A DNA stretch of 64,000 nt, taken from positions 248,001 to 312,000 of IMG/VR virus record IMGVR_UViG_3300044640_001495; one strand, 5' to 3'. Below are positions 1,999 to 61,466 of the stretch, piece after piece. Positions within the stretch are counted from its first letter, which is position 1. Each line of letters begins with the position of its first letter. The notes beneath the pieces were generated by a model. It did not search any database and had not been told where the DNA came from. It worked only from the letters and a program-made list of their open reading frames with translations. The translations under genes and the position numbers were made by a program.

Positions 1999-2006
1999 GA
2001 TAAATA
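1999..2006 (+). promoter_or_regulatory. T4-type late promoter (GATAAATA) 7 nt before ATG 2014
   Basis: Matches the T4 gp55 late consensus TATAAATA; no Shine-Dalgarno present. Confidence 0.65.
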
Positions 2007-2013
2007 CACTACT

Positions 2014-2451
2014 ATGATCAACTTCACAAAATATTTCTTTCAAGGAGTTAAAAACACTCTTAGAATTCAGAACGGAGTGCAATTTGCCTACAAGGGTCCT
2101 TGGCAAACAGTAACACCCAACACCATTATAGACGAATGGTATGTTGGTGATTTTATGGCTGCAGAATACACAGTGGTAGTTGACGTGGGCAACACAAGAA
2201 AAGAAATAATCAAATGTCTAGTGGTAGCAGGCCCTGAAAATGCCAATCTTACCATTTATGGTCGTACCAATCTCAGCGAAAATCTAATAGATATCACAGC
2301 CACTGTTAATGCATCAAAAATGCAACTGGTGGCAAATCCGGCATCCAGCCCGGACGGATCAACCTATGATAACAGCACGTTGTTATTGGGTAGCAAGATG
2401 ATATTCAGTGCCACTTACTATCACACAATCAACGATCTTGCGATTACTTAA
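2014..2451 (+). CDS. hypothetical virion structural protein (start revised from 1990 to ATG 2014)
   Basis: Beta-rich sequence in the tail module, placed directly behind a late promoter. Confidence 0.6.
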   Translation: MINFTKYFFQGVKNTLRIQNGVQFAYKGPWQTVTPNTIIDEWYVGDFMAAEYTVVVDVGNTRKEIIKCLVVAGPENANLTIYGRTNLSENLIDITATVNASKMQLVANPASSPDGSTYDNSTLLLGSKMIFSATYYHTINDLAIT

Positions 2452-2463
2452 AGGTTAACTCCG

Positions 2464-2471
2464 TATAAATA
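2464..2471 (+). promoter_or_regulatory. T4-type late promoter, perfect TATAAATA
   Basis: Exact consensus upstream of 2522; GCGGAG SD-like sequence before the ATG. Confidence 0.8.
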
Positions 2472-2521
2472 CACTAGCAATCTTTGTGGAAGTTGATGGT
2501 GGTGGAATAGCGGAGAACTAA

Positions 2522-3085
2522 ATGTCAGTAAATTACATACCTTTAGAATCAAAAAGCGGCTTTCGCAGCCCGGGCTTCTCAGTGGATGAATTGGGAAATT
2601 TAACGGTCACTGGTGCTGTATCTGTTGCAGGTTCTATCGATACCACTGGCAGTTTCAAAATCAACGGTATTCCTATTATAGATGCCAGCGATTCGATCAT
2701 CGGCCTTGACCCAATCATAGAAAGAGCCATCGGACTAAGACAGTTGGGCACTTTAGATTTTCTAAACATTGCCGGCGATCTTATTATCAGTGAAGGATCC
2801 ACACCTTATTTCAATGTGGTCAACGGACATGTCGAAATGACCAGTGTGTCTTCAGTTGGCGCTATTAATAACATGGATATTGGGTTAATTGAACCCGGTG
2901 ACGGAAATTTTAAATCATTAAATGTTGGACCTGGCGATAGTACAGGTGAGCTCACAGTACAGGGAAATATCTATACCACCGGAGTTATAGATATTGCAAC
3001 AGCCCCTACAGAAACTACACACGCCACTAGAAAAGATTATGTTGATGCAAGAGTAGCTGCATTTTCAATTGCTTTTGGTGCTTAA
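2522..3085 (+). CDS. tail-fibre-associated structural protein
   Basis: Gly/Ile/Thr beta-repeats; C-terminal KDYVDARVAAFSIAFGA of the kind ending T4-like fibre proteins. Confidence 0.55.
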   Translation: MSVNYIPLESKSGFRSPGFSVDELGNLTVTGAVSVAGSIDTTGSFKINGIPIIDASDSIIGLDPIIERAIGLRQLGTLDFLNIAGDLIISEGSTPYFNVVNGHVEMTSVSSVGAINNMDIGLIEPGDGNFKSLNVGPGDSTGELTVQGNIYTTGVIDIATAPTETTHATRKDYVDARVAAFSIAFGA

Positions 3086-3095
3086 GGAAAAATAA

Positions 3096-6000
3096 ATGGC
3101 AAAGAAACAGATTAAACAATACGTATTTGAACCAGGAATAAGCAAAGATGCCAGCCTGTATCCTAAGGCAGTGGCTCTGCTGTTGGCCAACAAGGCCTTC
3201 CTTCAAGCTCAAGTTGTTGCATTTATCAATTATAATATCACAAATAATATTGCTCCGTATGTTGGATATACATTTGCTTCTGCAAAATGTACTAGAGACG
3301 TTGGTTTCTTTATTGATGCTGTTGCACATGATTTAAGATACGGCGGTAATGTCAATTCAAGACAGATAGCAGAATATTTCTGGATCGACGGCGAGCCAAT
3401 GATTCGCGGAGATGTCACTCCAGAAACCACGGGACAGGCCTATCTAGCCAGCGTTATCAACGACTATATCTTTACCAATACCACAGTGTCTCCTAGTTAC
3501 AGCAACGCCAGTGTGCAGACCAAATACATAGGTCAGAATGCAGAAGCAGGTGCTAGCTCAAGAAACACCAGCCTATGGAATATCTTTACCACAGTGATCA
3601 CCAATGGTGTTGATTCTGTACCTGCCAAAGTCACAGGTGTTAGCAGTATAAAATTATTGGGCAATTACACATCCAGCGAACTGTTGTTGATTACCAACAC
3701 AGCAAACAATGAGATTCTTTATAATTTTGCTGACTCTGCGTTTCCTGTCACACTGGTGCAAAAACAAGGTAGAAGCAGCGGCGACGGAAAACTACTTAGC
3801 GATCTAGATTTTCCCTCATGGTGGCAGACCAGTGATGCCATCACCACTCTGTATCTGGCCAAAGACACTTCTACTGCGTCTGCCACAGATGACATTCAGA
3901 TTTTTGTTGAAAATGAATCACAAACAATTAGACCTTGGGACTTTGGTACAGATGCTATTGAGCGTATGCGTGTGGCTGCTCCACAGGCCATGTTGGATGC
4001 TGACTTTGAATATGGATTGCAACCAACCAAATGGCAAGCAATTGGCCTAATGAGAGGTTATCCATCTCTTTTTGAAATTCCAGGCACAGATTTAACAGTG
4101 TCTGCGATGACAACCGATGCATCTGTGAACACAGGAAATTTTGGAAGTTCATTAATCACGGTTACCACTTCGGGTTCACATGGATTTAGTATTCAACAAC
4201 CAATTACAGTAAAAGGATTAAATGCTGCTGTGAGTGGTTTTGCAAGAGCAGAAGGCAGTTTCTTGATCTACAGCGTTCCAAACTCAGTGACATTTACCTA
4301 TTATGCATCAGCTCGAGTAGGATCATCAGATGGTCAGAGTTTGTTCACTTCGTTTGTTCAAATACGGCAAGCAGGATTTTACACAGGAGCCTCAATAGGC
4401 CAGCCCACTTTCAGTGTGTTCAGTAATGGCTCTAACAACAGTATTACCAGCGTGTTTTCAACTCCTTCCGGATCATTCAACATTGCATTTAATGGAACAT
4501 CACCTACACCAGGATCTCCTATATCCGGCAGTCCAAATATTGCGGCAGCAACATCTGTATCTGGTGTTGTTGGAGCATCTACAGTAACAGCCAATGCGAA
4601 ATTTACCACCTTGATCACTGATACAGAACTATCACTGGTGGATTTAACTGGAGTTCAACAGGCCATGGCCATTGACAACGGTTCAGGTAGCGCAATTTTT
4701 ATTAACTCACTTTCTGGCAACTTGTTAAACTTGTCAGGGGCTTGCGGACAGGTCTACATAGGTGCCAATGCAACCAATACAGCAGTGAGTGGTACCAATA
4801 TCAACGGTATTGGAACAAACGCACACTTTGATGTCAGCAGAAGTGGTACCAGCTACACAGTGACTGATGCTCTTGACAGCTCATCAAACGGAGAAAATTA
4901 CGCAGTAGGAGATTCTATAATAATTCTAGGATCAGTGCTAGGTGGCACAGATGGGGTCAATGACGTCATCATCTCAGTTACTGCGGTTGACAGTGGTGGT
5001 GCCATAACTAATTTTAGTTTTGCAGGCACAGCTATATCAGGCGGTGCCACTTATAATAATCAAAATTCTTCTTCAACAACCAGTATAGCTGGTGGAGGAG
5101 CTCAATTATCAGTTGCACGAACAGGTGGCACTGGCGCTTATGCCATAGCTTTATCTGCCGGTGGAGCAGATTACCTAGCTGGCGACACAGTTACTTGGGC
5201 AGGTACACTGTTTGGAGGCACAAGTCCAGCCAATGACATTGTTATCCAAGTTGACGGTGTTACTGCAGGAGCCATAGTAGATTTCCAGATAGTGGGAACT
5301 CCTGTAGGAGCTTCTGGTGATGCATCTTATCCAGGTGAGACAGCTGCCAATATACCAGTATCTGGTAGCGGCGCAACATTTACAATTATACGCACTGATG
5401 GTGTATATTCTATAGTGAGTCCTATAGTTGTGCCCACAGGACTAGGATATGCTATCGGAAACAGAATACTGATTAGTGGAGCCAACCTTGACGGTGCAGC
5501 AGGTGTCAATGACTGTACTGTACAGGTAACCAACGTTAACGGCACAGGAGAAATACTCAGTGCTACAACTACAGGAACTCCTTTTGCGGGTTCTCCTATT
5601 ACCATTTACCCAACACTGAGTATCAGTGAAGCTACCACGGGTATCATTGGATCTGGAACAGTGTTGAATGTGGGCGCCATTGCCACAGTGCAGGTTGACT
5701 TTGCCACAAATCATGGTCTAGTACCAGGCACAACTATTTTGACCAGCATTTCATCACTGCCTGCTCCTGATTTTACGGCCACAGCAAGAACGCTGCCATC
5801 GTCAGGATCTTGGAGCGGAGTTGCATTTGCTGGCAGTACATTTGTGGCCGTGTTACCAGCCACTCAAACATCAGCAAGATCTATAGATGGCAGCAGTTGG
5901 GCCAGCGGAGGCAATCTGCCGTCGTCAGCCACGTGGACTTCAGTGGCTGCAGGTGTAGTTGCATCCACTACCTATTTTGTTGCTGTGGCCAGCGGCGGCA

Positions 6001-9828: not shown

Positions 9829-10198
9829 TTTCTAGTACCAGTATAGTGTCAATTTTAGCTCTAATCAGCTGATTGTTCAATGTGGTCTTTAATCCACCAT
9901 GTAGATTCTTAGGAAGACAATCCACGTTTGCCCAACAGATTGTGTCACTTGCATCCGTTAAGAATTCTAGATCAGTTAGACACACATATGTACCGTATTC
10001 AAATCCTCGATCTTCAGAAAGATACAGTTCAATAGGCAGTATCCTACCAACAGCATATCTAGACATCAGCTGCTCAGCATCTTCCAGCAATGTTGAATTT
10101 CTAGGAAATGTAGGCACAGTCCATTTTTGATCTTCAAGAATCAATAGAATTCTGCTAGTGTTTTTGGCAAGGAAAAGCAGTCCGGCACGTTGTTGCAT
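9806..10198 (-). CDS. degenerate NUDIX-fold protein
   Basis: Begins RAGLLFLAKNTSRILLI as NUDIX strands do, and has FEYGTYVC, but lacks the GX5EX7REUXEEXG box; late promoter TATAAGTA 4 nt upstream. Confidence 0.5.
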   Translation of the reverse strand: MQQRAGLLFLAKNTSRILLILEDQKWTVPTFPRNSTLLEDAEQLMSRYAVGRILPIELYLSEDRGFEYGTYVCLTDLEFLTDASDTICWANVDCLPKNLHGGLKTTLNNQLIRAKIDTILVLENDAKNTK

Positions 10199-10205
10199 CT
10201 TGTAC

Positions 10206-11846
10206 TTATACAGGATCTAGATCAAACCTCCAGTATCCTGATGCATACTCTCCTTCGAAACTCTTCATCCATTGACCATCACTGCCCCAACGATACTGTA
10301 CCCCAGTTTTTAAATTTTGGAACAGTAGACTGATCTTGTCAAATTTATCATTGTTTTCTGGAATATCAGTGTTTTCAATCTGAGTAATATTGGCATTGGC
10401 CTTGTAGGCAACTCCATCATAGATCACAATCTGATTCACGGTATAGGCTACAAGAGCCGCAGTAGAAGGGCTAGGAGTAGATACCATCCATTCTGGCATA
10501 AGGTTAACCCAAGCTGCACCGCTCCATTCAATGATAGAATTGGCTATAATTACAGGATCGCTACCGTTGAGATTTTTCCAACCATCCGGACCATCGTAGT
10601 TGAATGTGGGATTGAATGGAGGTGTATCGACCTGTGTGCCCACGTTTGAACTGTTGTTAACGTCTTCTAACACCAAATATCGTGTGCCTGCTACCAATGG
10701 TTGGTCCGCAGTTTCTTTGTTGGGACGTTTGGGATTAAACTTGTAGGGATCTACTATGGCATCTATAGTGGTTCTACCACTGGGGTACACTGAACTCACT
10801 ACTACTGTATTGGAAGGCTTGTCCTCTAGATTGACCAGCAGTAGAGTGGGGTCAATCTCGTTGACCACAAACGTGCCGCCCAGTTCATTACCATCTGCCT
10901 GTAAGAAAAATATTTTGCTGATACCATTGATATAACCACCATACAGCGCAATAATGGCATTCCAATCAATTGGATCACCGGTTTTTGTTGGTGGCTCAAG
11001 TCCGTTAGCCAGCAAGGCTTCATTTGGCGCCACGATGGATACATCATAATCATTGGCTTGATTGTTGTTGCTTTTCAACAGTAAAATTCTAAAATTGGCC
11101 TGTGTGTTAGGAGTGCGAACGAGACTGGGTGATCCTGCATAGATCAAATCATCCAACGACAGAATATCACCAGTATCACCAAACACATTTGCAACGATAT
11201 TTCTCACCACGCCCAACTTCTTAACCTTGGTAGGCGGACTGATATAGATAGGCATTTTAAATTCTATGCTGCAAATGTCTATGTCACTGTCTGCGCCTTG
11301 AGGGATAGTACGTGAACTAAAGTTCAATGTGGCTAGATCGATCACACTTAGACTGGTCCAGTCAATGTAGTTGTCTGTGGTTTGTATTTCCAAGCTGGGA
11401 TTGAACAGCACCAAAATCTGTTCCATTAGTTGTAGCTTTTGATCAGTGTTTGAAGTCCATATATCCGCTTTCATTGACAGTTTGAAAGGAGTAGGCATGA
11501 GTCTTTCCACTGTGTACCCTGCTCCTTGATAATTTTTATAGTTAATTTCACCGTCAACACTGTCATAGGCACGTTCACTGATGTTGAGCTTGCTGACAAA
11601 ACTAGCATCAGCCAGCCTAGAAGTGTCTAACTCAAGTCCTGAAATATAACAGGCAATTTTTGGCACTGTGGACATCTTGTTTTCGCTGTTGTCTTTAATT
11701 ATACTGGCCACTTGTCTAGTAAGATCGCCATACATCACAGGCACATGGCGCAGAGTGTCGTCACCAGCCTTGTATTTAAATCCTATGAACACACGCATGA
11801 ACTGTGTGACATATCGTCTTATCTGCCCGTCATAAAAATAGTCCAT
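10206..11846 (-). CDS. tail sheath stabiliser / completion protein, T4 gp15-like, with C-terminal extension
   Basis: MDYFYDGQIRRY, VPVMYGD, PTPFKL..ADIWTSNTDQKLQLMEQILVLFNP; adjacent to gp14 and gp13. Confidence 0.75.
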   Translation of the reverse strand: MDYFYDGQIRRYVTQFMRVFIGFKYKAGDDTLRHVPVMYGDLTRQVASIIKDNSENKMSTVPKIACYISGLELDTSRLADASFVSKLNISERAYDSVDGEINYKNYQGAGYTVERLMPTPFKLSMKADIWTSNTDQKLQLMEQILVLFNPSLEIQTTDNYIDWTSLSVIDLATLNFSSRTIPQGADSDIDICSIEFKMPIYISPPTKVKKLGVVRNIVANVFGDTGDILSLDDLIYAGSPSLVRTPNTQANFRILLLKSNNNQANDYDVSIVAPNEALLANGLEPPTKTGDPIDWNAIIALYGGYINGISKIFFLQADGNELGGTFVVNEIDPTLLLVNLEDKPSNTVVVSSVYPSGRTTIDAIVDPYKFNPKRPNKETADQPLVAGTRYLVLEDVNNSSNVGTQVDTPPFNPTFNYDGPDGWKNLNGSDPVIIANSIIEWSGAAWVNLMPEWMVSTPSPSTAALVAYTVNQIVIYDGVAYKANANITQIENTDIPENNDKFDKISLLFQNLKTGVQYRWGSDGQWMKSFEGEYASGYWRFDLDPV

Positions 11847-50699: not shown

Positions 50700-50705
50700 G
50701 TATGT

Positions 50706-51728
50706 ATGACTCTTGTTCTTGATAAGTTTAGAACTCTCCTTCCTTCAAAATTAAAGACCAGTCCCAGCGGCTGGATTAGTTTCAATGCTCCTTGCTGTCA
50801 GCATAGAGGTCATGCACACGACACTAGAAAGCGTGGCGGTATTATTATTACAGACAGTGTTGTCTATAATTGTTTCAATTGCAAATATTCTACAGGTTGG
50901 AAACCCGGCTCCCCAATCACTGCTAAATTTAAAAGTCTTTGTCAATGGTTAGGCGCCAATGACGACGATATCAAGCAGTTGATATTTGAAGCGATGAAAA
51001 CCGAATCTACAGAATATCAACCAGAAGCATTTGTAGAAAAACCCACATTCACAGAAAAGCCCTTGCCCGAAGGTGCATTACCTTTAATTGAATGGTTGGA
51101 TTCTCAATTGACTGATGTTCAAGAACAACAGTTGATCAAGGCGGTAGAATATGTGGTAGGTAGAGGCTACGATCCGTTGAGCGATCACTTCTTCTGGAGT
51201 CCAGAAGCAGGCTATGCAGATCGTGTCATCATTGCTTTCAAATATCTTGGAAAAATTGTAGGCAACACAGCACGTAAAGTCACAGACGGAAAGCCCAAGT
51301 ATTTGTCCGATCAACATCCATTCTTTGTGTTCAACGTTGACGAACAATGTGAGGCACATAGATATCTGTTTGTGGTAGAAGGCCCATTTGACGCTATCAG
51401 CGTCGGCGGGGTGGCCTTGCTCACTAATGAAATCTCCGACCAACAGGCTCGGATAATTAACAGTATAGGCAAAGAAGTGATTGTGATCCCAGATCAAGAT
51501 AAAGCAGGCACGTTTCTAATAGATCAAGCTAAAGAACTAGGTTGGTCAATTGCATTTCCAACTTGGGATGACTCTGTGAAAGATTGTGCAGACGCTGTGA
51601 AAAAATATGGCAAACTATTTGTTGTTGTTGATGCTATAAAAACAGCAACGGCAAATCCTGCAAAGATTGAAATTGAAAAAAGAAAGATGCTAAACAAGAT
51701 AGCAGTATTGGAGAATCAAAATGATTAA
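50706..51728 (+). CDS. DNA primase, DnaG/T4 gp61-like
   Basis: Zn finger CCQH..CFNC; TOPRIM VEGPFDA and PDQD; KDCAD. Confidence 0.88.
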   Translation: MTLVLDKFRTLLPSKLKTSPSGWISFNAPCCQHRGHAHDTRKRGGIIITDSVVYNCFNCKYSTGWKPGSPITAKFKSLCQWLGANDDDIKQLIFEAMKTESTEYQPEAFVEKPTFTEKPLPEGALPLIEWLDSQLTDVQEQQLIKAVEYVVGRGYDPLSDHFFWSPEAGYADRVIIAFKYLGKIVGNTARKVTDGKPKYLSDQHPFFVFNVDEQCEAHRYLFVVEGPFDAISVGGVALLTNEISDQQARIINSIGKEVIVIPDQDKAGTFLIDQAKELGWSIAFPTWDDSVKDCADAVKKYGKLFVVVDAIKTATANPAKIEIEKRKMLNKIAVLENQND

Positions 51729-51837: not shown

Positions 51838-52775
51838 TCATGTGGGGGGTAAATGCCCTTAATCATGGAAGTAGTCTTGCTGTATTCAAGGACGGCAGTC
51901 TGTGGTCCAATCAAGTGGGTTCTTCGGATGAATTAGACAGCAAAATAATTACCGATGCCCTGCATCTTGGAGCACCAGATCGTATCTTTTGGTACGAACG
52001 ACCCTGGATAAAGAAAGCAAGACAGGCATACGCAGGACAGTGGCATCGTGCCTTAGATATGAAGGTACTTCCACGTAGATATATGAAAGCGCAACATTAT
52101 GCTCCGATCACTTATACACCGCATCATGGTAGTCATGCAGCCGCAGGCTACTATACCAGTCCTTTTAATCATTGTGCTATTGTGGTACTCGACGCCATAG
52201 GTGAATTTGAATGTGCTACCATATGGGAAGGCCTACACGGAGAAATGCGCAAAGTGTGGAGCAGAAGTTATCCTAATAGTCTAGGGCTATTCTATAGCGC
52301 ATTTACTAACTTGTTAGGAATGACTCCAATACAAGACGAATATCTATTGCAACAAATGGCTAAGAAGGGCGACCCACATCGTTATAAACATGATGTTCAC
52401 AAATACATGAGCGGACTATTAATCTCTGGTAAGAACATGCACAAGGGCATCCTCGATTGGCCGCATGACATTGGAAATGAACAAGACCGTTACGATATTG
52501 CTGCCGCAGTTCAACGAGTGTTTGAAGATCAAATCCGTATGGTTATGCTAGAAGCTAAGAAATTAGTCAACACTGACTGTCTAGTTTATATGGGCGGTTG
52601 TGCTATGAATTCAGATGCTAATAAACGATTTGTGGAACCTGCATTTAAGTACAGGTGGAGTTTACCTAATCCAGGAGATCCATCTAGTTCTATCGGAGCA
52701 GTCTTGTATCACACTAAACAACGAGAGTGGAAATACAACTTTGGTGTTGCAAAGCACCTAGCAATTAGTGTATAA
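51834..52775 (+). CDS. carbamoyltransferase, Kae1-like N-terminal domain only
   Basis: NHGSS, HHGSHAAAGYYTSPF, LDAIGE, SLGLFY, MGGCAMN, PGDPSSSIGA; no GPRALG/YrdC-like domain follows. Confidence 0.85.
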   Translation: MIMWGVNALNHGSSLAVFKDGSLWSNQVGSSDELDSKIITDALHLGAPDRIFWYERPWIKKARQAYAGQWHRALDMKVLPRRYMKAQHYAPITYTPHHGSHAAAGYYTSPFNHCAIVVLDAIGEFECATIWEGLHGEMRKVWSRSYPNSLGLFYSAFTNLLGMTPIQDEYLLQQMAKKGDPHRYKHDVHKYMSGLLISGKNMHKGILDWPHDIGNEQDRYDIAAAVQRVFEDQIRMVMLEAKKLVNTDCLVYMGGCAMNSDANKRFVEPAFKYRWSLPNPGDPSSSIGAVLYHTKQREWKYNFGVAKHLAISV

Positions 52776-52776
52776 T
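52747..52776 (+). promoter_or_regulatory. sigma70-type promoter TTGCAA-N18-TATAAT, 7 nt before the ATG
   Basis: Perfect -10, weaker -35. Confidence 0.55.
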
Positions 52777-52783
52777 AAAATAT

Positions 52784-53401
52784 ATGTTTTATTATAATAA
52801 GAAATATCAAACAGGTGATCAATGGCTAATTGATACAGAATATACCAAGTATCAAGACCTATTGCCACTGGTTGAATCAAATCCCAATACTGAATACAGC
52901 AACGAAACTGTGGCGTTTAATGCTAGACAGTACCCATTGTGGAGTGATCCTGTGGTTGCACAGACAGTGAGACACAAACAATTTCTTGATAACTATGTTC
53001 AACACCCCGCTTGGGAAGAAGCAACACATGGTATATTCGAATGGACCAAGCGACGATTAAAAAGAAATAAAATTGACCTAAATTTTGTGCCAACTATTTC
53101 ATGGAGCATGGAATATGCCGCAGGCGGCTGGCAAAGCATGCATACACACGACAACGATTGTGTTACACAGATATTCTATTTAGATGGAGAAATAAACCAA
53201 GACCCAAATGTTAGTGCAAAAGAAAATGCATGGGGGTCTATGTATGCTTTTTTAACTAAAGGCGATAAACCATTATACAAATCATTTAGCAGTTGGGCAG
53301 GCCGTTGCATAATACTTCGTGGCGATATTTTCCACGGTGTTTATCCTATAAAAACATTGCCACGCAGAACAATTATTATGGATTATAAAGTGATACGATG
53401 A
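52784..53401 (+). CDS. 2OG-Fe(II) oxygenase superfamily protein
   Basis: WSMEYAAGGWQSMHTHD, IFYL, FHGVYP, RRTIIMD (HxD/H...H...R). Confidence 0.75.
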   Translation: MFYYNKKYQTGDQWLIDTEYTKYQDLLPLVESNPNTEYSNETVAFNARQYPLWSDPVVAQTVRHKQFLDNYVQHPAWEEATHGIFEWTKRRLKRNKIDLNFVPTISWSMEYAAGGWQSMHTHDNDCVTQIFYLDGEINQDPNVSAKENAWGSMYAFLTKGDKPLYKSFSSWAGRCIILRGDIFHGVYPIKTLPRRTIIMDYKVIR

Positions 53402-54834: not shown

Positions 54835-55060
54835 AAAAGTAGAGTTGTATAAATGGTTAGATAGCGAGGGCGAAAACATTGAAATTGATTGGCCCAAAGT
54901 GCATAAAACGCTAGGATTAGATCATACCAATTGGTTGTTAACGCAACCTGAAGATCAATGTCAAATAGTATTAGAAAAAAACGACATGTATTGTCGTTTA
55001 GTAGCAGAATTCTACAACGATCATGTACTAACACATTATCATTTAATGTGGGCTAAATAG
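54824..55060 (+). CDS. hypothetical protein
   Basis: Overlaps the helicase stop; protein-like. Confidence 0.6.
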   Translation: MKTKKVELYKWLDSEGENIEIDWPKVHKTLGLDHTNWLLTQPEDQCQIVLEKNDMYCRLVAEFYNDHVLTHYHLMWAK

Positions 55061-55063
55061 TAG

Positions 55064-55774
55064 ATGCGTCTAAGAGAATTACACGAACGATCAGATATAA
55101 TCACAGTTAATCGCCGTCTCAATCCCAAGATATGGAACGGTGATGCACTCGACCCAGCGGTGGCACAAAAACTCAAAGAAATTGCCGATGCATTTCAAGA
55201 GTTTATCGGCATTGATCTTGATGTAGTAGATTATACAATTACAGGATCAAATGCCAACTATACCTGGACCGAGCATTCAGACCTAGATCTGCATCTTATT
55301 GTTCAAGGTGAAGTAGATGATGCTGCTAGAGAACTATTCAATGCCAAAAAGGCACTCTGGGGCGAACAACACAATATCACCATCAAAGGTCTTCCTGTTG
55401 AATGTTATGTTCAGGGCAAAGAAGAAGAACACCACAGTACCGGAGTGTATAGCATAGCTGACAATCAATGGCTGGTCGAACCAAAGAAAATAAAACCAGA
55501 AGTAGATGACAGTGCTGTGGAAGCTAAAAAAGATTCAGTCATCCACGACATTGAAACTGCTCTATTAAGTAAAGATCTCAACCGCTTGAGACTAGTAAAA
55601 GAAAAGATCACTAAAATGCGTCAGGCAGGACTGGAACGTGCGGGCGAGTGGTCAGTAGAAAACCTAGTTTTCAAAATACTTCGAAACCTAGGTCTTATTG
55701 ATGAAATTACAGATAAAATTCGCGAACTAGAAGATCAAGAGCTGAGTCTAGAACAGGCCCAGTCTTTAGATTAA
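55064..55774 (+). CDS. DNA polymerase beta-superfamily nucleotidyltransferase
   Basis: ITGSNANY, SDLDLH (GS...DxD), PVECYVQ (third acidic), ENLVFKILR; late promoter GCTAAATA 4 nt upstream. Confidence 0.82.
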   Translation: MRLRELHERSDIITVNRRLNPKIWNGDALDPAVAQKLKEIADAFQEFIGIDLDVVDYTITGSNANYTWTEHSDLDLHLIVQGEVDDAARELFNAKKALWGEQHNITIKGLPVECYVQGKEEEHHSTGVYSIADNQWLVEPKKIKPEVDDSAVEAKKDSVIHDIETALLSKDLNRLRLVKEKITKMRQAGLERAGEWSVENLVFKILRNLGLIDEITDKIRELEDQELSLEQAQSLD

Positions 55775-56652: not shown

Positions 56653-57517
56653 CCTGTCCTGTGTATATCTTGCGACGTTTTGCCCAAGGTAATACGGGCC
56701 TGTATCTGTCACGATGTTCTAGATTTGATCGTACAGTGGCCACGTCTAATTCTTTGAAAATAAAGTCATCGTCTTTAAGCGCATTGTTTTTGATCAAGCC
56801 TTTGACAAATCCTTCTGTAAGGTCTAGCTGAGTGTCTGTGAGAAGACTGTGAACCAATTTATCCGCTAGAATTTTGTGATTGCTTAGGCACATGTGATTG
56901 TATCTGCCATCGAGTCCGTACCAAAATTTAGCATCAAGATCTGCCGTGATATCTTCAAATTCCCATTGTTGCACATCATCCATCAGTACGCCCTTGGCCC
57001 AATTGATTTCCTGCCAGGTTTCAGCTTGATCCACATCCTGCCCAAAGCATTTCATTATTATAGGTCTGTTGAGTTTTTTCTTTAGAGTCTGATAGGCAAG
57101 ATAGCCCATGCGATTGTTGATGTGTATGAGATCTAATCTAACTCGTTGAATATAACGTATGTAATACTCAATGGCTTTGGCTTCATCCTTGGTGACAAAA
57201 CTGTCCAAATCAATGATGTTGCTGTTGGTCATTTCGGGTAGTCTATCTAGGAACCAAAATCTACTGGGATGCGTTAGAGCTATGACAATGTAGTCATTTT
57301 CTGTAATTCTATGTTCTAACAAATGCTGCAGAACGTCCCAACAGTAGTCTTGAGCACAGCCCATGATGCTGAGATTTTCTAAAACAACATCATGCCCCAA
57401 TTGTTGTTTAAGTCCACGAGCCACCTGTTGTGGCCAAGTCACTGTGGTGTCTTCGGGTTTGGGCGGTACAGAAAAACTGTCACCGATCACATATAGTGTA
57501 GAGTATTTGTTGGTCAT
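56642..57517 (-). CDS. SGNH/GDSL-like protein, paralogue A
   Basis: YVIGDSFS, NLSIMGCAQ, DGRYNHMCLSNH. Confidence 0.65.
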   Translation of the reverse strand: MTNKYSTLYVIGDSFSVPPKPEDTTVTWPQQVARGLKQQLGHDVVLENLSIMGCAQDYCWDVLQHLLEHRITENDYIVIALTHPSRFWFLDRLPEMTNSNIIDLDSFVTKDEAKAIEYYIRYIQRVRLDLIHINNRMGYLAYQTLKKKLNRPIIMKCFGQDVDQAETWQEINWAKGVLMDDVQQWEFEDITADLDAKFWYGLDGRYNHMCLSNHKILADKLVHSLLTDTQLDLTEGFVKGLIKNNALKDDDFIFKELDVATVRSNLEHRDRYRPVLPWAKRRKIYTGQVDK

Positions 57518-57564
57518 ACAGTAGTTAGCTGCAGGGCATGGTCAGTGACAAAAAACTTGAAACT

Positions 57565-58395
57565 TCACCAACTGGGTCGTTTCATTATTTTTGACATAGT
57601 CCACGCAGGCCTAGCATGCATGTCCGTGATGCGATATTGATTGAATTCTCTCGCACAAAAATCTGTATCTCGCCAACTGTCTTTGAGAATAAGTCCTTGA
57701 ACGAATCCGTCAGCAAGATCCACTGTTAGACCTTGTTGGAAAAAATCCACAATTTTTTTGGCCAGTATGCCATGATTGCTCAAGGTGATGTGATTGTATC
57801 TACAGTCCACGCCTCTAAAATATTGATCACTTTGAGTGCCTGGTTCCGCAAACTCTTGCGTTTGGATATCAAACAAGGTGCCCGTGGCCCAGGCTATTTC
57901 TTGGTGGTGTTGAGCTTCACTGACGTCTATGTCAAAGCAGCGCAATATCAAAGGCTTGGGCAAGCCCAGTCTAGTGATGTAACTGGTGAGCCAACCCAAT
58001 CTCATCATCATGTGCAGAGTATCCAATTGTGGTCGTTGAATGTGCTGCATGAATCCTTCTATGGCCTTGTTTTTTTCCTTGGAAACATACTGATCCATAC
58101 CTATGATGTGCATGTTACTGAGATTGGGTTCATCTTGCACAAACCAATATCTGTTGGGATGTGTTAGACATATGACGATTCGATCTTCAGCTGTGATTTG
58201 ATTCACAGAATGAAATCCTGCTCTCAACTGTTGAAAGCACCAATCTTGACTGACTCCATGCTGACTCAGGGGCATTAATTTGAGTCCTAGGTCAGCAGCC
58301 ACCTGTCGCGGCCATGTGATGGTGGCGTCTGTTGATTCCATGGGTTCAACAGAGAAGCTGTCGCCTATCATGATTAGTCTCGGAGTTGTGGTCAT
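57565..58395 (-). CDS. SGNH/GDSL-like protein, paralogue B
   Basis: IMIGDSFS, LSQHGVSQ, DCRYNHITLSNH; aligns colinearly with paralogue A. Confidence 0.65.
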   Translation of the reverse strand: MTTTPRLIMIGDSFSVEPMESTDATITWPRQVAADLGLKLMPLSQHGVSQDWCFQQLRAGFHSVNQITAEDRIVICLTHPNRYWFVQDEPNLSNMHIIGMDQYVSKEKNKAIEGFMQHIQRPQLDTLHMMMRLGWLTSYITRLGLPKPLILRCFDIDVSEAQHHQEIAWATGTLFDIQTQEFAEPGTQSDQYFRGVDCRYNHITLSNHGILAKKIVDFFQQGLTVDLADGFVQGLILKDSWRDTDFCAREFNQYRITDMHARPAWTMSKIMKRPSW

Positions 58396-58435
58396 TTGTT
58401 ATAATTATCTTCTTGATAATATTCACTGAATTTTC

Positions 58436-58464
58436 TTGACAAAGGTTAAATAGCAGTATATAAT
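58436..58464 (+). promoter_or_regulatory. sigma70 promoter TTGACA-N17-TATAAT with nested TAAATA (58447-58452)
   Basis: Perfect boxes upstream of 58488. Confidence 0.75.
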
Positions 58465-58487
58465 TAAACATAACTTAGTGGACCATC

Positions 58488-58922
58488 ATGCTAGAAAGAA
58501 TCACCACACTCACAGACGAATTGATACGACTGCTCAAGGACGATCCTGTTCGACCTGAGATCCCTGCAGACTTTAGAGTGGACAAGAACTCCAGAGTTTA
58601 TGTGTTGAAGAGTGAAACAGGTGAGCCCATGGCTGTGACCTGTGTGAAGTTTCTAGCAGAAATTCCACAAAGTGTAGACGATCTTGCCAATGTGGCTGTG
58701 AATACTTCTACTGCGGTCTTCTATACCATTTGGAGTTATGCAGCCGGTGCGGGTCGCAGTCTTATAGAAGCGGCTCAAGAGGATATCAAGACTCACGAAC
58801 CCCAAGTTAAAACCTTTGTAACACTGAGCCCAAAAACAGAAATGGCTCGCAAGTTTCATCACAAAAACGGGGCCACTACCTATAGAGAAAATCAAGACTC
58901 AATTAACTATCAGTATCACTGA
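58488..58922 (+). CDS. GNAT-fold protein resembling the malonyl-CoA decarboxylase catalytic domain
   Basis: TAVFYTIWSY..GAGRSLI...KTFVTLSP parallels the MCD AVFYSIS...G.GNFLI...FVTLSP pattern. Confidence 0.55.
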   Translation: MLERITTLTDELIRLLKDDPVRPEIPADFRVDKNSRVYVLKSETGEPMAVTCVKFLAEIPQSVDDLANVAVNTSTAVFYTIWSYAAGAGRSLIEAAQEDIKTHEPQVKTFVTLSPKTEMARKFHHKNGATTYRENQDSINYQYH

Positions 58923-59548
58923 TCGTTAAAATTACCACACAATGTATCAACTAGGTGTTTTTCTTTTAGTTTATCAACAGTTGAATAATAGTGGTCGGAT
59001 GTAATTGGCCCTTTGGTTATCAAGGGATTCAGTTCATAATAGCCCATTGACAAAACATATCTAGATTCAGTTCCGTAATTAATACTGTTATGTGGTATTT
59101 GTGTGTTTAACAGATAAAATTGATTGGGTTCGTAGGTGAGTCTAGTATAGGGGAAATAGACGTAGTCTCGAGGCATAAGCGAATCCTTCTTGTGCTCATG
59201 TGCAAACATAACCAAATACTGATCATCTTGTGTCAACATTAAATTAAATGCAGTAGCACGGTAAACATCTCTATGCCAATTATAGATGTATCCGGGTTCT
59301 ATTAACAGTATTCTTGGGTATAAATTAAACTCTTGTATTAGTTCTAGAATTGGTTCGTTCTCGAAATAATTCTGCGGAACTTTATGCTGTTTGAACGTGG
59401 CTGATATCGCAACATCGTGGGTGACCCTGCCTTCTTTGCCTTGATTTTTAGTAACATCAACATGCCCGTAATCAAAAGTTTTACAGTCTTCAAATAAAGG
59501 ATTAGACGGCGAAAGCCCTAGTGATAATTTTGTGAAACACTCATTCAT
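58916..59548 (-). CDS. 2OG-Fe(II) oxygenase / Asp-hydroxylase-like protein (start revised to ATG 59548)
   Basis: EPGYIYNWHRD, AFNLML, PHNSINYG..RYVLS; late promoter AATAAATA 5 nt upstream. Confidence 0.7.
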   Translation of the reverse strand: MNECFTKLSLGLSPSNPLFEDCKTFDYGHVDVTKNQGKEGRVTHDVAISATFKQHKVPQNYFENEPILELIQEFNLYPRILLIEPGYIYNWHRDVYRATAFNLMLTQDDQYLVMFAHEHKKDSLMPRDYVYFPYTRLTYEPNQFYLLNTQIPHNSINYGTESRYVLSMGYYELNPLITKGPITSDHYYSTVDKLKEKHLVDTLCGNFNDQ

Positions 59549-59603
59549 GCTGCTATTTATTTTTTCATTTTGATCAATAGCAGCAAACGTGATTAGAACA
59601 TTA

Positions 59604-59810
59604 TCACTGACTACCGGGTTTAAAGCCCACTGTGTAGACAGCAACCACAGGTTCCCAATTTTCACGATCCTTGGCCGTTTGGCTTTCAGCAAACTGCTGT
59701 GCCACAAGATTGGCTCTGCTGAGATCGGTGATGTGTTCACCAGCGAGAAATTGACGCTGTAGTCTAATACCTGTGCGGCTGTTTCGGGCCATGATCTTGT
59801 ATGCTTGCAT
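59604..59810 (-). CDS. hypothetical protein
   Basis: AGGAG SD and late promoter GATAAATA at 59829-59836. Confidence 0.7.
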   Translation of the reverse strand: MQAYKIMARNSRTGIRLQRQFLAGEHITDLSRANLVAQQFAESQTAKDRENWEPVVAVYTVGFKPGSQ

Positions 59811-59855
59811 TGTGTGCTCCTGGTCGAGTATTTATCAACCTAGACACATCATTAC

Positions 59856-60431
59856 CTATTTGGATTCTTTAACTGTGTAGTTAATGGTTAACACATATCT
59901 GCTTTCGTGTGCAACGGGTGTGGTTGATGAGTGAAAATGCCTGCCGGGAAAGTCCATCCATAGATTGGCCGTGGGTTTTTGTCTGTGCCATTCTGTGTAC
60001 ATTTCCCTTTTAGGCTGTTCCTTGCGCTGATCAAATATGACAGTGTCACCATCACTGGTCGCAGGATAGAATATGCCTGTGCGATGATTCAGTACAGGAT
60101 GATCTATATGCGGTGTGTGTTCCACACTCCAGGGTGTGCGTGTGCATAGTCCCAGGCGCACTCTTAGTACTGAATCCAATTGTTGATCTTGATGATCCAG
60201 AGCAGCCAATAGTATGAGCAGACTGGGATCCCATAATGGACTGATATTTTGACTGTCCTTGTAGATCAAATGACTAAACGATCCCTGATACTGGGGATCC
60301 GCCCCACTGATATCATCAGGGTTAGCAGTAAAGGGCAGATAGAACCAATCTATAGCAGGATCAGTGAGGCGTTGGCAGACATAGCTGAATTGGTTGGGTT
60401 TGAGTAGATCTTGTATGAGTGTGATAGACAT
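59856..60431 (-). CDS. 2OG-Fe(II) oxygenase (start probably ATG 60431)
   Basis: HTPHID, GIFY..SDGDTVIF, HFHSSTTP, RYVLTINY; GATATATA 5 nt upstream. Confidence 0.75.
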   Translation of the reverse strand: MSITLIQDLLKPNQFSYVCQRLTDPAIDWFYLPFTANPDDISGADPQYQGSFSHLIYKDSQNISPLWDPSLLILLAALDHQDQQLDSVLRVRLGLCTRTPWSVEHTPHIDHPVLNHRTGIFYPATSDGDTVIFDQRKEQPKREMYTEWHRQKPTANLWMDFPGRHFHSSTTPVAHESRYVLTINYTVKESK

Positions 60432-60480
60432 GTGAGTATATATCACATGTCAATGATCACCACTCACAGAGTGGCAGCGA

Positions 60481-60654
60481 TTAGGCCTGTCCTGCAGTGG
60501 GATCTAGTGAAGGCAGTGGGGGCTCAACGGGTGGCACATCTTTGGGACTCTGTAGATCCCAATAGGCCATGTGTGCTTTACGTTCAGTAGTTTCGGCTAA
60601 TTTTTTAGCAGTTTCTGTGGCTGCGATTGCTTCGGGTGTCATTGGTCTTGCCAT
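60481..60654 (-). CDS. small hypothetical protein
   Basis: GGAG SD before ATG 60654; late promoter GCTAAATA at 60681-60688. Confidence 0.6.
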   Translation of the reverse strand: MARPMTPEAIAATETAKKLAETTERKAHMAYWDLQSPKDVPPVEPPLPSLDPTAGQA

Positions 60655-60718
60655 GAAGTTCTCCAAATTGGTTAATGATGTATTTAGCTGTGAGATTTCA
60701 GTTGTTGATGGCGCAGCC

Positions 60719-60763
60719 TAGCGCAAAATTTTTTGCTGCGAAGCAGTAGCGCAGATTTTTTGC
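60719..60763. repeat. direct repeat TAGCGCA(A/G)A..TTTTTGC flanking a GCTGCGAAGCAG hairpin
   Basis: Copies at 60719-60736 and 60747-60763; the first is a GCAAAA-TT-TTTTGC quasi-palindrome. Confidence 0.55.
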
Positions 60764-60775
60764 GATCAAGAGTGT

Positions 60776-60910
60776 CTAGTCATCCTCATCATCGTAGTCC
60801 TCATCATCTTCTTCATCATCCTCATCGTAGTCGTCATAATCATCATCCTCATCGTAGTCGTCATAATCATCATCCTCATCATCGTCATAGAAGTGTGGAA
60901 CTGTGCTCAT
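60776..60910 (-). CDS. 44-aa hyperacidic Asp/Glu/Tyr peptide (absent from the ORF track)
   Basis: MSTVPHFYDDDEDDDYDDYDEDDDYDDYDEDDEEDDEDYDDEDD*; GGGAGA SD; GCTATATA late-like motif at 60932-60939; contains a 27-bp tandem duplication. Confidence 0.8.
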   Translation of the reverse strand: MSTVPHFYDDDEDDDYDDYDEDDDYDDYDEDDEEDDEDYDDEDD

Positions 60911-60982
60911 GATAATCTCCCTGTGATCATGTATATAGCTGAAAAAAGGCTAGACACCACGAAAAAATACGTGCGCAGTTTT

Positions 60983-61192
60983 TTAAAGCCCGGTGACTGG
61001 ATCTAGAGTGGGATCTACTAGAGGACAGTGATCACTGAAACGTAGCACAAACTCTGTGTATGCAGGCGTGTGAGTGTCTAGCCAAAAGCGAGTGCGATTG
61101 AGGTGTACTTCATGATCAAGCGCATGACACTGAATAAATTCAAAAACAGTCTTTAGAATGGGACTGGAGTTTAGAACATAGTATTGCTGCAT
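60983..61192 (-). CDS. hypothetical protein (start ATG 61192)
   Basis: GCTATATA 5 nt upstream; protein-like. Confidence 0.6.
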   Translation of the reverse strand: MQQYYVLNSSPILKTVFEFIQCHALDHEVHLNRTRFWLDTHTPAYTEFVLRFSDHCPLVDPTLDPVTGL

Positions 61193-61196
61193 GTGA

Positions 61197-61466
61197 TTAT
61201 ATAGCGCCACGCAATATGCTCATGGTTATTTCTTGATCCGCTATACGAAGGACATTGTAGCACTCCCGCCGGATCTGCTTTTGACTGGGCTTGCTTCTAC
61301 GACCACCCGCAGAGCTATTAAGTGGCTGTAGCTGTAGAAAATTACTGTTGGGATAGAGTTTAATGACTCGGGCCAGAATGAGTCTATTGTGTTCAGTGAC
61401 TAGACAGTGATCTCCGGGTGCGAGAGTGTGGCCCGCAATGTCTCTGTGTTGTAAGGTATAGTTCAT
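61197..61466 (-). CDS. hypothetical protein, SH3/KOW-like small beta domain
   Basis: RDIAGHTLAPGDHCLV..LARVIKL pattern. Confidence 0.55.
   Translation of the reverse strand: MNYTLQHRDIAGHTLAPGDHCLVTEHNRLILARVIKLYPNSNFLQLQPLNSSAGGRRSKPSQKQIRRECYNVLRIADQEITMSILRGAI

What the first reader, a model, noticed from the sequence alone, without database searches (positions are those of the whole stretch)
1999..61205. Window-wide leaderless-mRNA programme: promoter boxes sit 4-7 nt before start codons
Seen directly: 18 genes have a T4-late-type box (TAAATA, or the variants TAAGTA, TAACTA, TAATTA, TATATA) exactly 4-7 nt before the ATG, with no SD. The ATGs are at 2014, 10198, 13111, 13136, 14884, 19114, 21032, 21523, 23086, 24684, 33412, 33456, 55064, 57517, 58395, 59548, 60431 and 61192. 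Three sigma70 promoters do the same (ATG 43202, 50706 and 52784, 6-7 nt after the -10 box). Established: T4 late and sigma70 transcripts start a few nt downstream of these boxes. Inference: these mRNAs begin at or next to AUG, whereas bulk proteins (sheath, tube, SSB, fibre) keep strong SDs. This would be a two-tier translation scheme that could set stoichiometry, survive anti-SD or ribosome-targeting defences, or point to a host that translates leaderless mRNA well. It also corrects several ORF-track starts.
Basis: partly seen in the sequence, partly recalled or inferred. Interest (0 to 1): 0.72.

Follow-up and report, generated by a model that had tools for sequence, protein, structure and literature searches.

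The report
Late promoters fused to start codons
In this 353-kb freshwater jumbo phage, about one gene in ten has a T4-type late promoter box (or a host-type promoter) ending 4-6 bases before its ATG. Those messages most likely begin at the start codon with no ribosome-binding leader, a layout kept across the phage's wild relatives but absent from its cultured cousins.

Summary
Genome-wide, TAAATA is depleted (229 copies against about 365 expected), yet 38 copies are followed by ATG at 4-5 nt (13 expected). Of these, 31 open ORFs of at least 50 aa (0.7 expected).

TAAATA and TAAGTA are about 50-fold enriched before gene starts. TAACTA, TAATTA and TATATA are not, so sites 57517, 58395, 60431 and 61192 are unsupported.

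The box behaves as a gp55-type late promoter:
- The genome encodes a gp55-like sigma factor.
- The same GA-TAAATA element also lies 15-40 nt upstream of SD-led structural genes (sheath, baseplate, fibres).
- No -35 element is present.

Indirect evidence puts the transcription start on the A of ATG:
- T4 promoter geometry predicts it.
- The base at -1 is never A and is T or C in 84% of cases.
- The start codon is ATG only.
- The first 40 nt are weakly structured.
- Terminators or 24-56-nt divergent gaps leave no room for a leader.
- Box and spacing are invariant in dozens of relatives while the spacer varies.

Seven cultured relatives, T4 among them, show no enrichment. Some have the same box with an SD leader at the orthologous gene.

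No 5'-end data were obtainable. The proposed stoichiometry and defence roles remain speculative.

The parts
2001..2016 (+). TAAATA (2001-2006) + 7 nt + ATG 2014; a terminator hairpin and T-run lie directly upstream
   Evidence: (hairpin -14.6 kcal/mol). In relative G001 the same box carries a 23-nt leader with an SD-like GAGCGAGC.
10196..10208 (-). TAAGTA (10203-10208) + 4 nt + ATG 10198; weak case
   Evidence: TAAGTA is enriched as a class, but this copy is not conserved in G001.
13109..13138 (.). Back-to-back divergent boxes in a 24-nt intergenic gap: minus-strand TAAATA 13119-13124 + 7 nt + ATG 13111, and plus-strand TAAATA 13125-13130 + 5 nt + ATG 13136
   Evidence: G001 keeps both boxes and both spacings although the gap is rearranged. 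The genes are a virion structural protein and an Ad2-type head-tail adaptor.
14882..14895 (-). TAAATA (14890-14895) + 5 nt + ATG 14884
   Evidence: G001 has TAAGTA at the same spacing.
14952..14991 (+). Leadered comparison case: TAAATA 14952-14957, a 31-nt leader with SD AGGAG 14976-14980, and the sheath ATG at 14989
19103..19116 (+). TAAATA + 5 nt + ATG 19114 (367-aa tube-like protein), just after a terminator hairpin and T-run
   Evidence: (hairpin -10.3 kcal/mol). Terminator, box and spacing are conserved in G001.
21022..21034 (+). GA-TAAGTA (21022-27) + 4 nt + ATG 21032; the TAA of the box is the stop codon of the upstream gene
   Evidence: GATAAGTA is invariant in 67 relatives while the spacer varies.
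21512..21525 (+). TAAATA + 5 nt + ATG 21523; the TAA of the box is the upstream stop codon
   Evidence: The box is invariant in 69 relatives, with a variable spacer and a variable preceding codon.
23044..23088 (+). Terminator hairpin 23044-23067, T-run, TAAATA 23075-23080, 5 nt, then ATG 23086 of terminase large subunit
   Evidence: Of the 80 relative loci (44 distinct upstream sequences), all but two have the hairpin (with compensatory changes), an invariant TAAATA, a variable 5-nt spacer and ATG.
24673..24686 (+). TGA-TAAATA + 5 nt + ATG 24684 (655-aa virion structural protein)
   Evidence: Conserved in 79 relatives. The orthologous gene in phages Phosso, Atu_ph07 and XaC1 has TAAATA plus a 24-27-nt leader with AGGAG.
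33410..33458 (.). Divergent pair in a 43-nt gap: minus-strand TAAATA 33419-33424 + 6 nt + ATG 33412, and plus-strand TAAATA 33444-33449 + 6 nt + ATG 33456
   Evidence: No orthologue in G001.
55054..55066 (+). TAAATA + 4 nt + ATG 55064
   Evidence: Across relatives there are 39 distinct upstream sequences: 22 have the box 4-5 nt before ATG (always ATG) and 12 have a GGAG SD (8 ATG, 4 GTG).
59546..59559 (-). TAAATA + 5 nt + ATG 59548; this is the true start of the ORF listed as 58916-59740
   Evidence: The N-terminal extension scores -5.5 for coding against +66 for the body. A relative has stop codons upstream and GGAG in place of the box.
43167..43204 (+). Sigma70-type promoter TTGACT-N17-TATAGT + 6 nt + ATG 43202
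   Evidence: Conserved in a relative 68% identical in protein.
50671..50708 (+). Sigma70-type promoter TTGACA-N17-TATACT + 6 nt + ATG 50706
   Evidence: 11 of 12 matches. G001 has TTGACA-N17-TAAAAT + 6 nt + ATG.
52747..52786 (+). Sigma70-type promoter TTGCAA-N18-TATAAT + 7 nt + ATG 52784
   Evidence: No orthologue was found in G001.
57515..61203 (-). Four claimed variant boxes that are not supported: TAACTA 57522-27 (ATG 57517), TAATTA 58402-07 (ATG 58395), TATATA 60437-42 (ATG 60431), TATATA 61198-203 (ATG 61192)
   Evidence: These hexamers are not enriched before gene starts. None has an orthologue in G001. No gene was called at 61192.

Best explanation
The window lies in a 353-kb freshwater jumbo myophage related to PA5oct, Atu_ph07 and the Rak2-like phages. 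Its TAAATA box (extended form G-A-TAAATA, with TAAGTA as a variant) is the -10-like element of a T4-type late promoter. It is read by host RNA polymerase carrying the phage's gp55-like sigma factor. The element has no -35 partner.

At about 45 of 453 genes (14 in the window) the box ends 4-5 nt, occasionally 3-8 nt, before an ATG. Transcription would then start on or within a base or two of the A of ATG and give a leaderless mRNA. Such an mRNA must be translated by direct recognition of its 5'-terminal AUG rather than by SD/anti-SD pairing. About a dozen host-type sigma70 promoters do the same at their own characteristic spacing of 6 nt.

The same late box also drives SD-led genes through 15-40-nt leaders (sheath, baseplate, fibres).

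Shown here: the motif, its statistics, its conservation, the sigma homologue and the architecture. Inferred: the start site, and therefore leaderless translation.
For: 1. Motif statistics are far above chance. Gene-level count: 45 genes have the box 3-8 nt before ATG, against about 1 expected from the internal-ATG rate of 0.11%.

2. The box is a promoter, not just start-codon context.
- 45 intergenic copies lie 9-60 nt upstream of genes, most of them with an SD in between.
- Both sets share G at -2 and A at -1, whereas copies inside genes have T-T there.
- There is no information content from -45 to -3, so no -35 element.
- 39% of boxes lie in the roughly 7% of the genome that is intergenic.

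3. A gp55-like sigma factor is encoded at G000:203594-204460. It matches phrog_12791 at E 6e-80 and T4 gp55 at BLASTP 2e-8. Five of the 7 T4 residues that form the -10 pockets are identical (residues from PMC7892883).

4. Geometry fits. In T4 the box occupies -13 to -6 (the A at -12 is flipped out; PMC7892883), so TAAATA + 5 nt puts +1 on the A of ATG. Sigma70 promoters abutting ATG peak at 6 nt, as their own geometry predicts.

5. The base at -1 of box-adjacent ATGs is T 27, C 11, G 7 and A 0 of 45, against 40% A in SD-led genes (Fisher p = 3e-9). This is the pyrimidine(-1)/purine(+1) start-site signature.

6. Start codons are ATG in 45 of 47 cases. In one gene family, GTG occurs only in the SD-led versions (4 of 12 vs 0 of 22, p = 0.011).

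7. The first 40 nt are less structured in box-adjacent genes (-2.2 vs -4.0 kcal/mol, p = 3e-5).

8. The architecture leaves no room for a leader. 16 of the 45 genes are divergent, most of them with gaps of 24-56 nt. 5 follow a terminator hairpin directly.

9. Conservation.
- Box and spacing are invariant upstream of four genes in 67-80 relatives each, while the spacer bases vary.
- 15 of 21 orthologues in the diverged genome G001 keep the leaderless layout, and 3 keep the box but gain a leader.

10. The layout is lineage-specific. The pattern exceeds its reversed control in five relatives of the lineage (25/9, 15/6, 16/6, 11/6, 14/3). It does not in T4, PA5oct, Vibrio 2.275.O, XaC1, CBB, Phosso or Atu_ph07.
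Against: - No transcript 5' end was measured. The only RNA data reachable were short assembled contigs of 95-99% relatives from lake metatranscriptomes, which gave no end information.
- 21 of the 45 genes sit tightly behind a same-strand gene. They could also be translated from read-through polycistronic RNA.
- At about 7 of these, judged from the gap lengths, the TAA of the box doubles as the upstream stop codon. Part of the box is then constrained for another reason.
- The start-site distance of this gp55-like factor is assumed from T4.
- A gp45 clamp homologue is only marginal (E 0.0055), and gp33 was not sought.
- The box also precedes some non-structural genes (ThyA, RNR large subunit), so 'late' timing is assumed, not shown.
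Confidence: 0.7

Rival explanations
1. The box is a late promoter, but the adjacent ORF is translated mainly from longer read-through transcripts by SD-independent initiation or by termination-reinitiation. On this view the closeness of box and ATG simply reflects a tightly packed genome.
For: - 21 of 45 box-adjacent genes lie 3-30 nt behind a same-strand gene.
- In several the box's TAA is the upstream stop codon.
- About half of all genes here lack a strong SD by my threshold, so SD-independent initiation must be common anyway.
Against: - Packing alone does not predict a fixed 4-5 nt spacing kept across relatives while the spacer bases vary.
- It does not predict the total absence of A at -1.
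- It does not predict ATG-only starts.
- It does not predict a different modal spacing for sigma70 promoters.
- 16 divergent and 5 terminator-preceded genes have no upstream transcript to ride on unless terminators are read through.
Confidence: 0.15
2. TAAATA at 4-6 nt acts as a translational signal in the RNA, an A/U-rich substitute for the SD, and not as a promoter at these sites.
For: - It occupies about the same distance from the ATG as the SD does (d 4-6 against 5-7).
- In two gene families, box and GGAG replace each other at the same position.
Against: - The identical extended element (GA-TAAATA) stands 15-40 nt upstream of genes that have their own SD.
- It matches the T4 late -10-like element, and a gp55 homologue is encoded.
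- Spacers of SD-led genes are A-rich at -1, whereas here A is never found at -1.
- The box directly follows terminators.
Confidence: 0.07
3. The pattern is a by-product of AT-rich sequence near gene starts and of choosing ATGs after the fact.
For:
- Sigma70 consensus matches as a whole are not above shuffles.
Against: - 31 observed against 0.7 expected for box-N4-5-ATG opening an ORF of at least 50 aa.
- Composition-matched hexamers do not behave this way.
- The internal-ATG control shows 53-fold enrichment.
- The layout is conserved across relatives.
Confidence: 0.02

Closest known systems
Bacteriophage T4 late promoters (TATAAATA, read by gp55 with gp33 and the gp45 clamp)
   Same: - The same TAAATA core at the -10 position.
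- No -35 element.
- A gp55 homologue with most DNA-pocket residues kept.
- It drives structural genes.
   Different: - The upstream TA of the T4 octamer is replaced by a weaker G-A preference.
- TAAGTA is tolerated.
- In T4 the box is not enriched next to ATG (10 matches vs 12 in the control), whereas here about 40 boxes abut the start codon.
Predicted ATAAATA late promoters and gp55-like sigma factor of Rak2-like jumbo phages CBB and GAP32 (PMC5259590)
   Same: - A related phage clade (TerL about 44% identical).
- The same motif upstream of structural genes.
- A gp55-like factor, with no clear gp33 or gp45.
   Different: - CBB shows no excess of box-N4-5-ATG (7 vs 22 in the control).
- The parts of the paper I searched (terms 'promoter' and 'TAAATA') say nothing about leaderless transcripts.
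Leaderless phage mRNAs: lambda cI from PRM, and the middle/late transcripts of Thermus phages such as P23-45 (from my own knowledge; a Thermus-phage preprint that mentions leaderless transcripts came up)
   Same: The promoter is placed so that +1 is the A of AUG, there is no SD, and AUG is obligatory.
   Different: - Here the promoter class is gp55-type, in a T4-superfamily jumbo phage whose other genes use strong SDs.
- Start sites here are inferred, not mapped.
- phiKZ, the jumbo phage with dRNA-seq data, had no leaderless transcript (PMC8244752).
Poxvirus late promoters (TAAATG, where the initiator overlaps the start codon; several vaccinia papers surfaced)
   Same: A late-gene TAAAT-type element fused to the ATG, so that promoter and start codon form one unit.
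   Different: - A eukaryotic virus with a different polymerase and poly(A) leaders made by slippage.
- There the ATG is part of the element; here it lies 4-5 nt downstream.
- This is an analogy only.

Membership tests
T4-type (gp55-dependent) late promoter | A conserved -10-like element with a TAAATA core | tested here: met
   - The TAAATA core is invariant across relatives.
- It is 53-fold enriched before gene starts.
- The T4 octamer's first two bases are only weakly kept, as G-A.
T4-type (gp55-dependent) late promoter | No conserved -35 element | tested here: met
   Information content is at most 0.16 bit at every position from -45 to -3, over 85 sites.
T4-type (gp55-dependent) late promoter | The phage encodes a gp55-family sigma factor | tested here: met
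   - phrog_12791 ('sigma factor for late transcription') at E 6e-80.
- T4 gp55 at E 4e-6 by genome search and 2e-8 by BLASTP.
- No Pfam family matches it.
T4-type (gp55-dependent) late promoter | The gp45 sliding clamp and gp33 co-activator couple transcription to replication | tested here: inconclusive
   phrog_223 (gp45) gives only a marginal match, E 0.0055, at G000:142146-142565. gp33 was not searched.
T4-type (gp55-dependent) late promoter | Transcription starts about 6 nt after the box, late in infection | not testable with these tools
   No isolate exists and no 5'-end or time-course data are available. The metatranscriptome contigs gave no end information.
Leaderless mRNA | The primary transcript's 5' end lies at or within a few nt of the start codon | not testable with these tools
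   Inferred only, from T4 geometry (PMC7892883), the pyrimidine(-1)/purine(+1) signature and the lack of space for a leader.
Leaderless mRNA | No SD, and an obligatory AUG start codon | tested here: met
   - The box fills the place where an SD would be.
- 45 of 47 box-adjacent candidate starts are ATG.
- In the family of gene 55064, GTG occurs only in the SD-led versions.
Leaderless mRNA | An unstructured 5' end | tested here: met
   Mean folding energy of +1..+40 is -2.17 kcal/mol against -4.02 for SD-led genes, p = 3e-5.
Sigma70 promoter giving a leaderless transcript (lambda PRM-cI type) | -35 and -10 hexamers spaced 16-18 nt apart, with the -10 hexamer ending about 6-7 nt before the ATG | tested here: met
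   - Sites 43202, 50706 and 52784.
- About 14 such genes genome-wide, with a modal spacing of 6 nt.
- 4 of 5 orthologues in G001 keep the arrangement.
- Start sites were not measured.

The most novel reading that the evidence does not exclude
An abundant, uncultured lineage of freshwater jumbo phages has deleted the 5' leaders of about 10-13% of its genes, so that gp55-type late promoters and some host sigma70 promoters fire directly onto the AUG. This would create a second, SD-independent translation channel running beside strong-SD genes. Individual genes switch between the two channels over evolutionary time, with box and GGAG replacing each other at the same position. That switching suggests the choice of channel is a tunable expression trait, for example for dosage, for timing, or for insensitivity to anything that attacks SD/anti-SD pairing.
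Probability: 0.3. Interest if true: 0.75.

Novelty: new variant of a known kind. Interest (0 to 1): 0.58.

Why it matters
If the start sites are confirmed, this would be a T4-superfamily phage that systematically makes leaderless late mRNAs. I found no precedent for that in the papers searched, and seven cultured relatives, T4 among them, show no such layout.

It bears on annotation. Gene callers that expect an SD mis-place these starts, for example 59548, 24684, 13111 and 2014.

It bears on host biology, because the host would need ribosomes that translate 5'-AUG mRNAs efficiently.

It bears on evolution. The same gene is found box-led in some relatives and SD-led in others, which gives a natural experiment on the cost and benefit of leaderless expression.

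It also offers a very compact unit of about 14 bp that combines promoter and start codon, plus back-to-back versions that fit two divergent genes into 24 bp.

Tried and rejected
- **RNA evidence.** Both run searches found the region only in freshwater and lake metatranscriptomes, kept as short assembled contigs. Laying four runs on 14300-20299 gave fragments of 95-99% relatives and no places where molecules begin.
- **DNA search for close cultured relatives.** None found.
- **Pfam scan of the gp55-like protein.** No family matched. PHROGs and pairwise comparison were used instead.
- **A phage ribosomal protein as the cause.** The phage encodes bS21, but so do PA5oct, Vibrio 2.275.O and Atu_ph07, which lack the leaderless layout. 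I rejected it as the specific cause. No IF3 C-terminal domain or S1 domain is encoded.
- **Variant boxes TAACTA, TAATTA and TATATA.** Tested and rejected as a class.
- **Literature.** Searches for 'leaderless' with jumbo phage, gp55 or late promoter found no description of this arrangement. The PA5oct RNA-seq paper reports only TATAATA/TTGAC promoters.
- **Sigma70 consensus scan.** It is not above shuffles as a whole, so the three sigma70 sites rest on match quality, spacing and conservation.

Full report
**What the window is.** The window is bases 248001-312000 of a single 353,123-bp viral contig with 41% GC. CheckV rates the contig 98% complete. The contig is a jumbo myophage.
- Window genes include a tail sheath, tube, head-tail adaptor, terminase large subunit (TerL), SSB, a UvsX-like recombinase and a 2153-aa virion protein.
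- The nearest cultured phages by TerL are PA5oct (53% identity), Sinorhizobium phage Phosso (51%), Agrobacterium phage Atu_ph07 (49%) and Rak2-like phages such as CBB (44%).
- No close DNA relative exists among GenBank phages.
- IMG/VR holds more than 590 relatives of its TerL, and the best 80 are at least 87% identical.
- The sequence occurs in freshwater and lake metatranscriptomes.

**Checking the observation.** The pattern is far above chance.
- In the window, TAAATA-N4-5-ATG occurs 9 times against 2.7 +/- 1.4 in dinucleotide shuffles.
- In the genome, TAAATA is depleted: 229 copies against 365 +/- 21 in 3rd-order Markov simulations.
- Even so, 38 copies are followed by ATG at 4-5 nt (13.3 +/- 3.3 simulated), and 31 of these open an ORF of at least 50 aa (0.7 +/- 0.8 simulated).
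- The distance from box to next ATG peaks at 4 nt (18 sites) and 5 nt (20 sites).
- None of the other 14 hexamers of the same composition behaves this way.
- An unbiased hexamer scan upstream of candidate starts finds two signals only: SD-type words at 5-7 nt and TAAATA at 4-6 nt. It also finds weaker TATAAT at 6 nt and TTGACA at 29 nt.

Against ATGs inside genes, TAAATA is 53-fold and TAAGTA about 56-fold enriched at gene heads. TAACTA, TAATTA and TATATA are not enriched. The boxes claimed at 57517, 58395, 60431 and 61192 therefore do not stand, and 61192 is not a confidently called gene.

With my own gene calls (453 genes), the classes are as follows:

| Class | Genes |
|---|---|
| TAAATA or TAAGTA 3-8 nt before an ATG (about 1 expected by chance) | 45 |
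| Good sigma70 -10 hexamer 4-8 nt before an ATG | 14 |
| Strong SD | 160 |
| Weak or no recognisable signal | 234 |

**The box is a promoter of the T4 late type.**
- 45 further intergenic copies lie 9-60 nt upstream of genes, usually with an SD in between. Examples are the sheath, baseplate wedge and hub, tail fibres and a tailspike-like protein.
- These leadered copies and the ATG-adjacent copies share the same extra context, G at -2 and A at -1. Copies buried in coding sequence have T-T there.
- No -35-like conservation exists out to -45.
- The genome encodes a 288-aa homologue of the T4 late sigma factor gp55. It matches phrog_12791 at E 6e-80 and T4 gp55 at BLASTP 2e-8.
- Five of the seven T4 residues that form the pockets for the -10-like element are identical: N13, R57, F86, Y97 and T99. 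L54 becomes Y and H95 becomes F (residue list from PMC7892883).
- A similar ATAAATA motif and a gp55-like gene were predicted before in the Rak2-like phages CBB and GAP32 (PMC5259590).

**Why the transcripts are probably leaderless.** No 5' ends could be measured, so this step is inference. It rests on eight independent lines.
1. *Geometry.* In the T4 open complex the A at -12 is the second base of TATAAATA, so the box spans -13 to -6. TAAATA + 5 nt therefore puts +1 on the A of ATG. Sigma70 promoters that abut ATGs peak at 6 nt instead, as their own geometry predicts.
2. *Start-site signature.* The base before the ATG is T in 27, C in 11, G in 7 and A in none of the 45 genes. In SD-led genes it is A in 40% (Fisher p = 3e-9). 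This is the pyrimidine(-1)/purine(+1) preference of bacterial RNA polymerase.
3. *Start codon.* It is ATG in 45 of 47 box-adjacent candidates.
4. *5' structure.* The first 40 nt of box-led genes fold more weakly than those of SD-led genes (-2.2 vs -4.0 kcal/mol, p = 3e-5).
5. *No room for a leader.* 16 of the 45 genes are divergently oriented from their neighbour, most of them across gaps of 24-56 nt. The pair at 13111/13136 shares 24 nt that consist of two back-to-back boxes. Five genes follow a terminator hairpin and T-run directly, as at 2014, 19114 and 23086.
6. *Conservation.* Of the 80 relative loci upstream of TerL (44 distinct upstream sequences), all but two carry the hairpin (with compensatory stem changes), then an invariant TAAATA, a 5-nt spacer of variable sequence and ATG. 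Genes 21032 (GATAAGTA), 21523 and 24684 show the same in 67-79 relatives. In the diverged complete genome G001, 15 of 21 orthologues keep the box-adjacent layout although flanking bases have changed. Three keep the box but have a leader, and three have lost it.
7. *Switching between layouts.* Orthologues of gene 55064 fall into a box-led form (22 distinct sequences, spacing 4-5, all ATG) and a GGAG-led form (12 sequences, four of which start with GTG; p = 0.011). Gene 59548 has the box here and GGAG at the same place in a relative.
8. *Orthologous promoter with a leader elsewhere.* The gene after TerL has TAAATA followed by a 24-27-nt leader with AGGAG in Phosso, Atu_ph07 and XaC1. In this lineage the same box touches the ATG.

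**How special it is.** The pattern TAAATA-N4-5-ATG exceeds its reversed control in this genome and in five lineage relatives. It shows no excess in seven cultured phages.

| Genome | Pattern | Reversed control |
|---|---|---|
| This genome | 38 | 13 |
| G001 | 25 | 9 |
| G002 | 15 | 6 |
| G003 | 16 | 6 |
| G004 | 11 | 6 |
| G005 | 14 | 3 |
| T4 | 10 | 12 |
| PA5oct | 20 | 30 |
| Vibrio phage 2.275.O | 6 | 5 |
| XaC1 | 6 | 28 |
| CBB | 7 | 22 |
| Phosso | 4 | 2 |
| Atu_ph07 | 17 | 26 |

The promoter type is therefore shared with the wider clade, but fusing it to start codons is a trait of this freshwater lineage. Literature searches found no description of it. phiKZ, the jumbo phage with dRNA-seq data, had no leaderless transcripts.

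- The contrast with bulk proteins holds. Sheath, tube (18411), SSB, the major capsid protein (G000:221023), baseplate and fibres are SD-led.
- The box-led set is mixed. It holds TerL, an adaptor, several virion proteins, a 367-aa tube-like protein and a fibre-like protein. It also holds thymidylate synthase, a peptidase, a 2OG-Fe(II) oxygenase, a metallophosphoesterase-like protein and HNH endonucleases, along with many proteins of unknown function.
- A dosage role is plausible but not shown.
- Nothing here bears on defence evasion.
- Some host-type early promoters are also fused to ATGs, which suggests the host translates leaderless mRNA adequately. The host is unknown.
- A phage-encoded bS21 is present, but it is shared with relatives that lack the layout, so it does not explain it.

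**Rivals.**
- *Read-through translation.* Translation from polycistronic RNA cannot be excluded for the 21 tightly packed genes. It does not explain the fixed spacing, the -1 base bias or ATG-only starts.
- *RNA-level A/U-rich ribosome signal.* The same element occurs upstream of SD-containing leaders and matches the gp55 system, which contradicts this reading.
- *Chance.* It is excluded for TAAATA and TAAGTA.

**Verdict.**
- The sequence observation is confirmed for 14 of the 18 late-type sites and for the three sigma70 sites.
- The leaderless reading is the best explanation, at about 0.7 confidence.
- The arrangement is a new variant of known things: T4-type late promoters and leaderless phage mRNAs.
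- Proof needs 5'-end mapping.

Noticed in passing
G000:C1:24880-25318 (outside the window; L108:4880-5318): The phage carries a permuted (two-piece) tmRNA. It scores over the Rfam thresholds for beta_tmRNA (102 bits, threshold 84) and tmRNA_permuted (120 bits). The tag peptide ends in ALAA. This hints at a betaproteobacterial host.
   Followed up: partly
G000:C1:58125-66330 and 327481-327765 (outside the window): ARAGORN finds 32 tRNA genes, mostly in one cluster. They cover all 20 amino acids. There are none in the window itself.
   Followed up: no
G000:C1:33322-33558 (outside the window): A phage-encoded ribosomal protein bS21 (78 aa; Pfam PF01165, 68.5 bits). It is conserved in relative G001 at 51% identity. 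It is also present in PA5oct, Vibrio phage 2.275.O and Atu_ph07, so it is not linked to the leaderless layout.
   Followed up: yes
Genome-wide, e.g. G000 starts at 40305, 49814, 127053, 175626, 225062 and 321279: The most enriched word before start codons is not plain AGGAG but GGAGCG(A) at 3-4 nt (9 cases, about 117-fold). This is a recurring extended SD-like cassette, often ...GGAGCGAnnnATG. The CGA part has no obvious pairing with the 16S tail.
   Followed up: no
window:13112-13135: Two divergent genes are separated by only 24 nt, made of two abutting, opposed TAAATA boxes (TATTTA|TAAATA). In relative G001 the two boxes are pulled apart, but each keeps its distance to its own ATG.
   Followed up: yes
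window:32834-32846: One further TAAATA-N4-ATG lies on the plus strand. It opens only a 39-codon frame inside or opposite the gene at 32777-33412. It is either a chance copy or a small unannotated ORF.
   Followed up: no
window:55000-64000: The right-hand end of the window has mostly minus-strand small genes. None of the five claimed genes there that were tested (57517, 58395, 59548, 60431, 61192) has an orthologue in the complete relative G001, and gene 59548 has only five close relatives in IMG/VR. It looks like a fast-turnover accessory region.
   Followed up: partly
window:140-1969: A Nol/NodU-like carbamoyltransferase (609 aa; phrog_1601, E 3e-165) sits just before the structural block and is followed by a strong terminator.
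   Followed up: no
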